Assembly (NCBI GenBank): GCA_964057225.1
Contig: OZ059900.1
Coordinates: forward strand, 12,524,001 to 12,588,000
Origin: Auanema rhodensis
Taxonomy: Eukaryota > Animalia > Nematoda
Length of the DNA stretch: 64,000 nucleotides
Direction of reading: 5' to 3'
How positions within the stretch are numbered: position 1 is the stretch's first letter; each line of letters opens with the position of its first letter. Of the stretch, positions 1 to 2,127 are shown piece after piece. The notes under the pieces are model-generated. The model searched no databases. It was not told the DNA's origin and saw only the letters and a program-made list of their open reading frames with translations. Made by a program: the position numbers and the translations under genes.

Positions 1-1598
1 GGCTTTTTGTTCGACATCGAGTCTTTGACTACGCTTTGGTCGAGAATATGCGCATGGCTGCATCCCCTTATGGTTCTGCGCATGGCAAGTTGTTGCGGAG
101 GCATATTGTCTCCTATATCTATGGTCACTATCTGCGTTAGGGCAGAAGTTAAAATTTTGTAACATGTATTCAGACACGCAATTGGTCTGTAGTTACTAGG
201 GTCGGACTGTTCACCTCCCTTATGCAATAGTACCACTTTACCGCGGCAGAGCCAGTCCGGTACTATGTGTGGGTTTATGTAAGCTTGCTGACAATATTTA
301 GTCAACTCGCTTTTTGCGGCGGTAATATACTTCCACCATCCAGCTTGTATCCCATCGGGCCCAGGGGCTTTCCAGGATGCGAGCTTTTTGAACACTTTGG
401 TCCAAATATGTTCACCAATGCATCTGGTGTGAGGAGTAGGTTGGCCTTGTTGGGGCTCAAATTTCTCCATTTCACTGGGTGGGTTAAATTTATCGGATTT
501 TCCAATAATCCCTTCCCAGTATTTTCTGATCTCTTCCACTTGTGGTGGTGTATGATCAGTTTGTCGATCGGATCTAAGGGCTGCTTTCAGTCCAAGTTTC
601 CGAATGGTTCGGCGTTTATTCGCCTCAAGCTCGACTTTAATCTCATTTTGATGAGTTTTGAGCTTATCTTTTAGTGTTCTGATCGAACACACTATTTCTT
701 CGGTTGTATGGGAGTTCAACCTGTCTAATATGGGTTGGATCTTAATGAACCATGAGTTTCTGTAAAACCTACATTGGTTACGTCTACTCAATTCTTGCGT
801 TAATACGCTAATATCTTGTAGGAGTTGCTTCCTACGTATTTTGAGGTTGGTTATTACCTCGTTTTTAATTGGTTTTCGCTGTTCTAAGATCAGCTCAGCT
901 GCACTGTACAGTGCTGCATTTATTTTACGCAGACGCTCTCTCGGGCCAGAATGCTTGGCAAGGACTCGTTTGACTAATGCATTGCATAAGCCAATTTCAT
1001 CTTTGCCGAGATTTGGTCTCGGGATGTGTAGCGGTTTGCGATTTCCATGTTTCAAGTATTTACGGTACTTGGACATGTATTGTTCCCACGTAATTTCGGG
1101 GATACTGGGTTCTTCTATCGGACTTATAGGAGCACCAGTGATGTCTGCTTGAGATGAAGCATGATGAGAATTTCCTGAATTCTCAATGTTATTCCTAGTC
1201 CGCTTTTGGGGCGGTTTCGGATTGCCTGTATCGGCGTTTCTTTTGATTCCTCGTGTATCCGAGGTTTGAGTCGACTCTGTATCGAGTCTATTTAATGTAA
1301 GTCTCGCGTTTTTTGCGAGGCTAGCCGTCTCCGTTTCTGGAGTTTGTTCGGCTTCTTGGGTTTGCTCTCTCTGGGAAGTGGAAGCACTCATAATTGAGCG
1401 TTTCCTTCCTCGAGTGAGCATACCGGTTATTTGCGAGACGGAATGGTCTCTAGAATCACTAAGATTATTTTGACCTAACATACTTGGCGGAGGGCCGCTC
1501 TCTGGCGGGTTAGATCGGGCTGCCAGAGACACCTCGCTGTCTTGGACACGCCGGCTCCCGCGTGTCTTGGTTTGTCTCGTTATAGGGACTTTACTCAT
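1..1598 (-). CDS. Non-LTR retrotransposon ORF (reverse transcriptase, R4-clade-like), 3'-partial, at least 532 aa
   Basis: Manual translation from ATG at 1598 has no stop to the window edge: MSKVPITRQTKT...EEIRKYWEGIIG...LASWKAPGPDGIQAGWWK...PDWLCRGKVVLLHKGGEQSDPSNYRPIACLNTCYKILTS...QQLAMRRTIRGCSHAHILDQSVVKD. These are the N-terminal RT motifs of non-LTR elements (PGPDG; K..G...P.NYRPI.CL...YK). The frame is also open 61 codons upstream of the ATG (stop TGA at 1784-1782), so the true start is uncertain. Confidence 0.93.
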   Translation of the reverse strand, partial: MSKVPITRQTKTRGSRRVQDSEVSLAARSNPPESGPPPSMLGQNNLSDSRDHSVSQITGMLTRGRKRSIMSASTSQREQTQEAEQTPETETASLAKNARLTLNRLDTESTQTSDTRGIKRNADTGNPKPPQKRTRNNIENSGNSHHASSQADITGAPISPIEEPSIPEITWEQYMSKYRKYLKHGNRKPLHIPRPNLGKDEIGLCNALVKRVLAKHSGPRERLRKINAALYSAAELILEQRKPIKNEVITNLKIRRKQLLQDISVLTQELSRRNQCRFYRNSWFIKIQPILDRLNSHTTEEIVCSIRTLKDKLKTHQNEIKVELEANKRRTIRKLGLKAALRSDRQTDHTPPQVEEIRKYWEGIIGKSDKFNPPSEMEKFEPQQGQPTPHTRCIGEHIWTKVFKKLASWKAPGPDGIQAGWWKYITAAKSELTKYCQQAYINPHIVPDWLCRGKVVLLHKGGEQSDPSNYRPIACLNTCYKILTSALTQIVTIDIGDNMPPQQLAMRRTIRGCSHAHILDQSVVKDSMSNKK

Positions 1599-1689
1599 AT
1601 TTGCAAATTGTACGGCTTGCGAACCGTGCCCTGTGTTACATAACTGTAAGTGAAATCCCTTTGTAAGGCAGGGGCATGATTTCAGAATT

Positions 1690-2001
1690 ATTTTCGGACT
1701 TATGGTCCTAATCAGATTGGACGAGACGGAATAGTCTCTACGGTTATGTTTGAGATGTAAATCTCGCTCCAAGGTTCTTCTTCACAGAATTCTCTTGTAT
1801 AGAGCATTTTCGGACGAATAGTCCTAGTGGGTCGAGACGGAATGGTCTCTATGATTATGTTTGAGATGTAAATCTCGCTCCAAGGTCCTTCTTACAGAAT
1901 TCTCTTATATAGAGCATTTTCGGACGAATAGTCCTAGTGGGTCGAGACGGAATGGTCTCTATGATTATGTTTGAGAAGTATTTCTCATTCCTAAATCCTT
2001 C
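1690..2001 (-). repeat. About 2.8 tandem copies of a 110-116 bp repeat in the element 5' UTR
   Basis: cgagacggaatrgtctcta recurs at 1722, 1833, 1943; ttttcggac recurs at 1691, 1807, 1917. Copies 2 and 3 are nearly identical and the outer ends are diverged. Confidence 0.9.
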
Positions 2002-2015
2002 AAAAGAGAAGTTTC

Positions 2016-2126
2016 TTACCTATTAGCCCCCAACACCTAGATGTTGTGGTTTACAGACACACCACGAGGAGGTTAGGTAACAGTTGTAGGAACAACTGGC
2101 CGTATTAACAGGCTTACGGCGGTGTC

Positions 2127-2127
<1 letters not shown>
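2016..2127 (-). ncRNA. HDV-like self-cleaving ribozyme at the retrotransposon 5' end
   Basis: Minus strand: P1 GGACAC / GUGUCU (G1-U wobble); J1/2 with two hairpins (GCCGUA..UACGGC and CAGUUGU..ACAACUG); P2 UUACCUA / UAGGUAA; P3 ACC / GGU; L3 UCCUCGU; single C-G P1.1; P4 CCACAACA..UGUUGGG; J4/2 GCUAA with the candidate catalytic C at 2026. Confidence 0.9.

What the first reader, a model, noticed from the sequence alone, without database searches (positions are those of the whole stretch)
1..2127. Apparently intact R4-like site-specific retrotransposon inserted in the 28S gene of a Caenorhabditis-like rhabditid
Seen: a clean junction at 28S ...GTGACGCGCATG|, a complete 5' end (ribozyme plus UTR), and at least 532 codons without a stop or frameshift, reaching into the RT domain. 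One of 10 target sites in the window is occupied and the other 9 are empty (e.g. 8697/8698). Known: R4 elements target the 28S between the R2 and R1 sites and were described from Ascaris and other parasitic nematodes; they are single-ORF RT plus C-terminal restriction-like endonuclease elements. Inference: this is a young, possibly active member, likely a new family in this lineage, and a candidate rDNA safe-harbour insertion tool. The ORF track missed it.
Basis: partly seen in the sequence, partly recalled or inferred. Interest (0 to 1): 0.8.

Follow-up and report, generated by a model that had tools for sequence, protein, structure and literature searches.

The report
R4-type retrotransposon in nematode 28S
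One of the ten 28S rRNA genes in this window is split by a full-length copy of a long-known kind of site-specific jumping gene (R4 type); this copy is broken by a frameshift just outside the window, but intact sister copies sit elsewhere in the same rDNA.

Summary
On the minus strand, 28S stops at ...GTGACGCGCATG (window 2127) and an element starts at 2126. Nine other sites in the window are empty.

With the flank fetched, the element is 4482 bp with a 12-bp target duplication. It has a 5' HDV-like ribozyme, a 528-nt leader and one ORF carrying RT, a CCHC knuckle and a restriction-like endonuclease (RLE).

"Apparently intact" fails for this copy: a 2-bp deletion 40-41 nt left of the window splits the ORF. 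Three other full-length copies keep open 1204-1205-codon ORFs. Variants among copies are 47 synonymous to 32 non-synonymous, so the family was recently active.

Its relatives in Haemonchus placei, Ancylostoma duodenale and Heligmosomoides polygyrus (3' junction only), two unnamed assemblies and Bursaphelenchus xylophilus occupy the same 28S site. Their ribozyme stems P1 and P2 covary. Best protein identity is 47%, so this is a new family of the known R4 kind. A tree with Ascaris R4, Dong and Rex6 could not be built.

Two features stand out. This family alone among its close relatives lacks the N-terminal Myb-like domain. Its 3' UTR carries 42 nt antisense to the 28S flank.

The scan had already met this family elsewhere in this genome.

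The parts
2127..4494 (-). 5' part of the interrupted 28S rRNA gene, ending at the insertion site
   Evidence: Rfam LSU_rRNA_eukarya matches at 2568-4494 and 2098-2563. It is identical to the uninterrupted units up to window 2127.
2127..2138 (-). Upstream copy of the 12-bp target-site duplication GTGACGCGCATG
   Evidence: The same 12 bp recur directly after the element's 3' end at L020:633-644, which is window -2356..-2367.
2016..2127 (-). HDV-like self-cleaving ribozyme. P1 is GGACAC/GUGUCU and includes the junction G. A 40-nt J1/2 insert forms two hairpins. P2 is UUACCUA/UAGGUAA, P3 is ACC/GGU, L3 is UCCUCGU and J4/2 is GCUAA.
   Evidence: drz-agam-1 scores 23.5 bits, E 0.033. P1 and P2 covary while P3 and L3 are conserved across six elements at this site. 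The MFE fold recovers P2 and both J1/2 hairpins.
1599..2126 (-). 5' untranslated leader (528 nt), which includes the ribozyme
   Evidence: The first ATG of the long frame is at element nt 529, window 1598.
1722..1980 (-). 110-nt tandem repeat, 2.3 copies, inside the leader. Variant copies outside the window carry about 5.5 copies.
   Evidence: TRF reports period 110, 95% matches.
1..1598 (-). ORF codons 1-532 of the single ORF. The ORF continues left of the window and is frameshifted at window -40/-41 (L020:2959-2960).
   Evidence: The intact homologous ORF of 1205 aa is L021:3433-7047:-.
1089..1598 (-). Low-complexity N-terminus (aa 1-170, rich in S/T/R/P, no tryptophan), where relatives carry a Myb-like domain
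   Evidence: An HMM of the relatives' Myb-like domain scores below 1 bit in all three forward frames of the first 2.6 kb. It scores 36-91 bits in five relatives. Variants in this stretch are 7 non-synonymous to 4 synonymous.
1..215 (-). Start of the reverse-transcriptase domain (Pfam RVT_1 begins at aa 462). NYRPI lies inside it at 180-194; the upstream PGPDG motif is at 351-365, outside this range.
   Evidence: Pfam RVT_1 E 7.4e-27 over aa 462-722 of the intact copy.

Best explanation
This is a full-length but inactivated copy of a young family (called F1 here) of R4-type non-LTR retrotransposons that use a restriction-like endonuclease and are specific for one site in the 28S gene.

Shown here. 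The element is 4482 bp, in the sense orientation within 28S, and flanked by a 12-bp duplication. Its single ORF encodes RT (YMDD), a CCHC knuckle and an RHD...KPD...E endonuclease. A 5' HDV-like ribozyme abuts the junction. All copies found lie at the same site.

Inferred from what is known of R2, R4 and Dong. The element is co-transcribed with pre-rRNA by Pol I. The ribozyme cuts at the junction, or one nucleotide before the junction G, and so frees the element's 5' end. The protein nicks the antisense strand just before GTGACG and primes reverse transcription from that nick on the element's 3' UTR. The sense strand is cut 12 bp further on, after CATG, which produces the duplication.

The window copy cannot make the protein, because a 2-bp deletion shifts the frame before the YMDD motif. 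Sister copies in the same rDNA can.
For: - Junctions and duplication.
- Copies: 2 intact in 28S (1205 aa, L021 and L022), 1 variant with an in-frame 3-bp deletion and an open ORF (L023), 1 copy 5'-truncated at the same site (L024), and 3 frameshifted (this copy and the two identical B variants)..
- Divergence among copies is 0.4-1.4%. There are 47 synonymous and 32 non-synonymous codon variants, and shared variants are mostly synonymous.
- Domains: Pfam RVT_1. YMDD, CCHC, RHD and KPD were verified in this copy at L020:2630-2641, 1559-1615, 1520-1528 and 1361-1369. phmmer aligns aa 403-1037 to R2 proteins through the CCHC and RHD motifs.
- Same-site relatives: H. placei, A. duodenale, H. polygyrus (3' junction only), Logan P0002, a JGI metagenome contig and B. 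xylophilus.
- All 120 hits of the first search share the YxDD-CCHC-RHD-KPD order, and none has an N-terminal C2H2 finger.
- Tree: F1 groups with three unnamed sequences (support 100), sister to a strongylid clade (support 100).
- Ribozyme: six elements keep P3 and L3, while P1 pairs with each element's own 5' end using different sequences.
- Literature: R4 and Dong ribozymes cleave at the element's 5' end (PMC3774820). All known R4 elements make target duplications (PMC3636483). Repbase lists R4 families from Ascaris, Strongyloides and Bursaphelenchus (PMC7650587).
Against: - No named R4, Dong or Rex6 sequence could be obtained, so clade membership rests on site, architecture and neighbours rather than on a reference tree.
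- The ribozyme is below Rfam's gathering score, and its non-pseudoknotted fold is not unusually stable (z -1.36).
- No transcript, cleavage or insertion data exist here.
- F1 lacks the Myb-like domain that its relatives have, so how the protein finds the site is unexplained.
- Some copy-number increase is array duplication rather than transposition: the two B variants are identical over 5633 bp.
Confidence: 0.85

Rival explanations
1. The window copy is really intact, and the 2-bp gap is an assembly error or a programmed frameshift.
For: The lesion is only 2 bp in an otherwise 99.2%-identical copy. rDNA arrays are hard to assemble.
Against: The gap comes with an adjacent substitution, so it is not a plain one-step homopolymer length error. 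No other copy has it. This copy's private coding changes are 4 non-synonymous to 1 synonymous, as expected for a dead copy. No slippery site or conserved overlap is seen, and relatives have a single continuous ORF.
Confidence: 0.1
2. It is not an R4-clade element. It is a derivative of R2 or another RLE clade that moved to a neighbouring 28S site, as R8 and R9 did.
For: R2 proteins are the only solved relatives, and the alignment covers RT through the endonuclease. The reference tree could not be made.
Against: R2 scores only 71 bits, against 400-770 bits for same-site nematode elements. There is no N-terminal C2H2 finger. The element makes a target duplication, whereas most R2 elements make a deletion (PMC3636483). 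The ribozyme's P1 lies at the element's own 5' end, as reported for R4 and Dong (PMC3774820). B. xylophilus, a species with Repbase R4 families, has members of this group at this site (PMC7650587).
Confidence: 0.07
3. The family is no longer mobile, and today's copies were spread only by unequal crossing-over and segmental duplication of the rDNA.
For: The two B variants, 79 kb apart, are identical together with their flanking F5 fragment. Elements are stacked in composite arrays.
Against: Independent insertion events are visible. These are full-length copies in plain units (this copy and L021), a full-length copy that directly follows an F5 3' end (L022), a copy 5'-truncated at element nt 1672 with its own junction, and variants with different leaders. 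Three ORFs remain open. The synonymous excess shows that selection acted on coding capacity during the divergence.
Confidence: 0.15

Closest known systems
R4 of Ascaris lumbricoides (Burke, Muller and Eickbush 1995) and the Repbase R4 families of nematodes (R4-2_AS, R4-4_SRa, R4-5_BX)
   Same: The host is a nematode. The insertion is in 28S between the R2 and R1 sites; here the junctions lie 26 and 38 bp after the R2 site in a 74-bp interval. 'Midway between R1 and R2' is my recollection of the 1995 abstract. There is a single ORF with RT, CCHC and RLE. A target duplication is made (PMC3636483). An HDV-like ribozyme is predicted to cut at the element's 5' end, as reported for R4 (PMC3774820).
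   Different: No sequence comparison with R4_AL was possible. The best identity to any protein in the 5.8-billion-sequence collection is 47%. This family lacks the Myb-like N-terminal domain of its nearest relatives. Its ribozyme carries a 40-nt J1/2 insert, and its leader carries 110-nt tandem repeats.
Unnamed 'reverse transcriptase' elements of strongylid nematodes (Haemonchus placei P0003, Ancylostoma duodenale P0004, Heligmosomoides polygyrus P0012 and others)
   Same: They use the identical 28S position, with CATG at the 5' junction and an 11-12-bp duplication. The domain order is the same. They form the sister clade in the tree. The ribozyme core is the same, with compensating P1 and P2.
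   Different: Identity is 40-43%. They encode a Myb-like domain upstream of the RT. Their ribozymes are compact, 55-74 nt against 111 nt.
R2 elements (R2Bm, R2Tg and other solved structures)
   Same: They use an RLE and target-primed reverse transcription, are specific for 28S rDNA, are co-transcribed with rRNA, have an HDV-like ribozyme, and have a CCHC followed by RHD/N...PD...(D/E) at the C-terminus.
   Different: The site is 26-38 bp downstream of the R2 site. There are no N-terminal zinc fingers or Myb. A 12-bp duplication is made, where most R2 elements make a small deletion. Similarity is only 71 bits.
Dong (Bombyx mori) and Rex6 (fish), the other named R4-clade members
   Same: According to the literature they share the single-ORF RT plus RLE architecture. 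Dong also has a ribozyme that cuts at the element's 5' end (PMC3774820).
   Different: Dong inserts into TAA repeats, not rDNA (PMC3774820).

Membership tests
R4 clade / R4 elements | Site-specific insertion in the large-subunit rRNA gene between the R2 and R1 sites | tested here: met
   All seven F1 copies lie at GTGACGCGCATG, 26-38 bp after TTAAGG|TAGCC. Relatives from four named nematode species (one with only the 3' junction in hand) and two unnamed assemblies lie at the same place. The exact Ascaris R4 coordinate could not be read, because the 1995 paper is not held.
R4 clade / R4 elements | Single ORF with RT followed by a CCHC motif and a restriction-like endonuclease, and no AP endonuclease | tested here: met
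   RVT_1 covers aa 462-722. YMDD is at 654, CCHC at 996-1014, RHD at 1025 and KPD at 1078. The alignment to R2 runs through CCHC and RHD.
R4 clade / R4 elements | Target-site duplication on insertion | tested here: met
   There is a 12-bp perfect duplication. Relatives have 11-17 bp. PMC3636483 states that all known R4 elements make duplications.
R4 clade / R4 elements | RT phylogeny grouping with R4_AL, Dong and Rex6 to the exclusion of R2, NeSL, HERO and CRE | not testable with these tools
   Two word-index searches returned no Ascaris, Dong or Rex6 sequence among the 120 rows listed by each. The tree of what was found puts F1 beside strongylid same-site elements.
R4 clade / R4 elements | 5' HDV-like ribozyme cutting at the element's 5' end | tested here: inconclusive
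   The comparative fold is strongly supported: P1 and P2 covary in 6 of 6 elements.
R2 elements | Insertion at the R2 site and N-terminal C2H2 zinc finger(s) plus a Myb domain | tested here: not met
   The site is 26-38 bp downstream. There is no C2H2 pattern and no Myb-like domain. Similarity to solved R2 proteins is only 71 bits.
HDV-like ribozymes | Nested double pseudoknot: P1 starting at the cleavage site, P2, a 3-bp P3 with a 7-nt L3, and a catalytic C in J4/2 | tested here: met
   P1, P2, P3, L3 and a GCUAA J4/2 were located in F1 and five relatives, with compensating changes. P1.1 is weak in F1, where UGU follows P1 in place of UGG. Activity is untested.

The most novel reading that the evidence does not exclude
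F1 may have replaced protein-based target docking with RNA-based docking. Apart from the distant B. xylophilus lineage, it is the only element examined here that lacks the N-terminal Myb-like DNA-binding domain, and it still inserts at the exact base. Its 3' UTR carries the longest stretch seen (42 nt; element nt 4369-4410; L020:717-758) that is antisense to the 28S sequence 4-47 nt beyond the duplicated 12-mer. This stretch could pair with the displaced sense strand of the target, or with the downstream 28S part of the co-transcript. Either pairing would position the template 3' end, or define it, for target-primed reverse transcription.
Probability: 0.2. Interest if true: 0.7.

Novelty: new member of a known kind. 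Interest (0 to 1): 0.35.

Why it matters
R4 elements have been known since 1995, so another nematode family is mainly a catalogue entry and a correction: this copy is dead, while the family is not.

The comparative set assembled here has some value. It comprises six ribozymes with compensating stems, a shared first-strand nick with variable second-strand cuts (11-17-bp duplications), and two families stacked head to tail at one site. Together these give a clean natural experiment on how RLE elements define their junctions.

A recently active, exactly site-specific member without the Myb-like domain, carrying a target-antisense 3' UTR, is a testable lead on how these enzymes find their site. 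That question bears on current efforts to engineer R2-type enzymes for rDNA insertion (PMC13580325).

Tried and rejected
- Rfam at gathering thresholds finds only rRNAs.
- The plain MFE fold of the ribozyme is not significant (z -1.36), because the pseudoknot is not modelled.
- The MAFFT alignment of the six ribozymes (A3) was not in structural register. The count of structure pairs was therefore not run, and pairing was checked by script instead.
- Two word-index protein searches returned no Ascaris R4, Dong or Rex6 among the rows listed. The costly representative search was not used, because it returns no names.
- Burke 1995 and Malik 2000 are not held.
- AlphaFold of aa 150-460 gives an all-helical model (pLDDT 77). 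Foldseek against the PDB finds nothing below E 0.1. VIA-align finds only generic helical hairpins and a weak LINE-1 ORF2p match (Z 8.3). No DNA-binding fold was identified.
- The Coccinella hit (L035) has uninformative flanks.
- In B. xylophilus a ribozyme core was found only in a 2.1-kb short element, 393 nt from its 5' end.
- The presence of the antisense 3' UTR segment does not track the absence of Myb cleanly across relatives.
- The host species was not identified.
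Full report
**Setting.** The window is C8:12524001-12588000 of a 181-Mb assembly. It is a tandem rDNA array with a 6571-bp period and the rRNAs on the minus strand. It holds nine complete 28S genes and one that Rfam shows broken near model position 2324-2356 of 3401. The host looks like a nematode, judged from the element's relatives. 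I did not identify the species.

**The observation.** Aligned with two uninterrupted units, the first unit is identical through ...GTGACGCGCATG and diverges at the next base. 28S therefore ends at window 2127 and foreign sequence starts at 2126, read on the minus strand. The 12-mer occurs ten times in the window, nine times followed by native 28S and once by the element. The long frame has its first ATG at window 1598, and 532 complete codons reach the window edge without a stop.

**The whole element.** I fetched the left flank. 28S resumes at window -2356, starting again with the same 12 bp. The element is therefore 4482 bp, from window 2126 to -2355 (L020:645-5126), and is bracketed by a perfect 12-bp target duplication.
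- The leader is 528 nt and the 3' UTR is 338 nt, ending in ...CCAAAAATGC without a poly(A) tail.
- In this copy the ORF is split into open frames (stop to stop) of 610 and 670 codons by a 2-bp deletion with an adjacent substitution. The lesion is at window -40/-41, which is L020:2959-2960.

**Other copies.**
- Two 4484-bp copies have an open 1205-aa ORF. L021 lies in an otherwise plain 28S unit. In L022 the 5' end directly follows an F5 element's 3' end plus the 12-mer.
- One variant has an in-frame 3-bp deletion and an open ORF (L023).
- One copy is 5'-truncated at element nt 1672 (L024).
- Two identical "B" variants flank the window, each with a 1-bp deletion.
- Every copy has GTGACGCGCATG at its 3' junction. 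The six full-length copies also have it at the 5' junction; the truncated L024 joins 28S two bases short of it.
- Copies differ by 0.4-1.4% in the ORF.
- Distinct codon variants are 47 synonymous to 32 non-synonymous, far from the roughly 1:3 expected without selection. Variants shared between copies are mostly synonymous.
- The window copy's private changes are 4 non-synonymous to 1 synonymous.

This pattern fits a recently active family in which the window copy is a decaying member.

**The protein.** Pfam finds RVT_1 at aa 462-722. Downstream lie YMDD (654), a CX3CX8HX4C knuckle (996-1014), RHD (1025) and KPD...E (1078-1095). I verified these in this copy's own DNA. phmmer against the PDB aligns aa 403-1037 to R2 proteins through the knuckle and RHD, but at only 71 bits. 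There is no AP endonuclease and no N-terminal C2H2 finger.

**Relatives and the site.**
- The best hits are two unnamed assemblies at 46-47% identity, then strongylid nematodes at 40-43%, then rotifer-like and metagenomic sequences, and then Bursaphelenchus and Meloidogyne.
- All 120 hits of the first search have the order YxDD-CCHC-RHD-KPD.
- I fetched the DNA for several. In H. placei and A. duodenale the 5' junction follows the same CATG and 28S resumes at TGACGCGCATG (11-12-bp duplication). For H. polygyrus only that 3' junction is in hand.
- The Logan P0002 element shares both junctions (12-13-bp duplication). For the JGI metagenome element only the 5' junction (CATG or CATGA) is in hand.
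- B. xylophilus elements share the 3' junction, but their 5' junction follows GAATG, giving a 16-bp duplication.
- A second family of this genome (F5, 31% identity) shares the 3' junction and has its 5' junction after AATGG, giving 17 bp.

The antisense-strand nick is therefore conserved, while the sense-strand cut varies. This is what target-primed reverse transcription predicts. The junctions lie 26 and 38 bp after the R2 site, in the 74-bp R2-R1 interval (the R2 and R1 positions are from my own knowledge). A maximum-likelihood tree places F1 with three unnamed sequences (support 100), sister to a 12-member strongylid clade (support 100).

**The ribozyme.** Rfam's permissive scan gives drz-agam-1 at window 2014-2094 with 23.5 bits, below the gathering score. 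The comparative evidence is much stronger.
- Six elements at this site keep P3 (ACC/GGU, or ACG/CGU in one) and a 7-8-nt L3 (UCCUCGU and variants).
- The 5-7 nt after P3 always complement that element's own first nucleotides, using different sequences: GGACAC, GGGGAC, GGCCCC, GUGGGG, GGGAUC and GGGAACU.
- P2 covaries in the same way.
- In four of the six, the first P1 pair is a G-U wobble, and in F1 and the two strongylid elements it involves the G of CATG. The RNA may therefore start one nucleotide before the DNA junction as drawn. The DNA alone cannot tell which.
- F1's ribozyme is long, at 111 nt, because J1/2 holds two extra hairpins.
- R4 and Dong ribozymes are already reported to cleave at the element's 5' end (PMC3774820).

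**Is it an R4?**
- In favour: the site, the target duplication (PMC3636483), the single RT-CCHC-RLE ORF without zinc fingers, the ribozyme at the junction, and nematode relatives that include a species with Repbase R4 families (PMC7650587).
- Missing: the defining test, a tree with R4_AL, Dong and Rex6.

I file it as a new family of the R4 kind at about 85-90% confidence.

**Two unexpected features.**
1. **Loss of the Myb-like domain.** 72 of 186 relatives carry an N-terminal Myb-like domain with a W-x22-W-x6-W triad. An HMM of that domain scores 36-91 bits in A. duodenale, both closest unnamed relatives, the JGI element and the co-resident F5 family. It scores below 1 bit in every forward frame of F1's first 2.6 kb. 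In its place F1 has 170 low-complexity residues that evolve almost neutrally. A structure model of aa 150-460 is helical, with no recognisable DNA-binding fold.
2. **An antisense stretch in the 3' UTR.** F1's 3' UTR holds a 42-nt stretch, ending 72 nt before the 3' end, that is antisense to 28S nt 16-59 counted from the first duplicated base (z = 10, 0 of 300 shuffles). The co-transcript is predicted to fold with this long-range helix (-52.9 kcal/mol, z -3.9). Shorter such stretches occur in A. duodenale (12 nt) and H. polygyrus (20 nt), against different parts of the flank. None occurs in H. placei, Logan P0002 or F5.

Whether the RNA stretch compensates for the lost Myb domain is speculation. 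I give it about 0.2.

**Verdict.** This is an ordinary but well-preserved member of a known kind. This copy is dead, and the family is probably alive. The scan had already met the family on other windows of the same genome (s1-429781, s1-419856 and others).

Noticed in passing
window -5581..-3785 (left flank, L017) and 73482..75277 (right flank, L018); L022:7742-10000; L023:2800-3146 and 8608-8700: A second R4-like family (F5, 31% identical, with a Myb-like domain and a 17-bp duplication GTGACGCGCATGAATGG) stacks head to tail with F1. An F5 3' end, the 12-mer and an F1 5' end follow each other directly. In L023, F1 is flanked by F5 on both sides. At least one insertion therefore used a half-native site.
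   Followed up: partly
window -11213..-5581 and 67849..73481; L023:3147-8607: 'B' variants of F1 have about 5.5 copies of the 110-nt leader repeat, plus an insert of about 860 nt that ends in a 118-nt piece antisense to the 18S 5' end (88% identity). The two B copies flanking the window, 79 kb apart, are identical over 5633 bp, which points to segmental duplication of the array or to an assembly effect.
   Followed up: partly
L025:5065-8007 (C8:4.014-4.017 Mb, far from the array): F1-like leader repeats are followed, about 700 nt later, by a complete 18S-like sequence in antisense orientation at 92% identity to the array's 18S. It looks like the undeleted form of the B-variant insert.
   Followed up: no
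window -15155 (L016/L017): The rDNA array is irregular here. Unit position 11339 is joined to 13218, a partial duplication of the 18S region. At window -3785 a 5'-truncated F5 copy abuts the spacer at unit position 7281.
   Followed up: no
L033:643, 6550, 8650 (Bursaphelenchus xylophilus CAJFCV020000005.1): Tandem R4-like elements are separated only by the 16-bp duplicated target. They include a 2.1-kb short element whose HDV-like core lies 393 nt from its 5' end and pairs with its first six nucleotides (CCGGUC/GACCGG). That would be a very long J1/2.
   Followed up: partly
protein P0158: A protein labelled 'MAG: RNA-directed DNA polymerase [Culicoidibacterales bacterium]' is a full-length eukaryotic R4-like RT-RLE protein. 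It is probably eukaryotic rDNA contamination binned into a bacterial MAG.
   Followed up: no
L020:633-652 (3' junction of the window copy): The element's last bases and the duplicated target form a small hairpin in the predicted co-transcript (AUGCGU/GCGCAU around GAC), inside the loop closed by the 3' UTR-28S helix.
   Followed up: no
G000 C4:581872, C8:11552241, C12:23276, C8:49162 and others: At least three further related families have open ORFs of about 1260-1300 codons (51%, 34% and 32% identity to F1). Some lie on small contigs.
   Followed up: no
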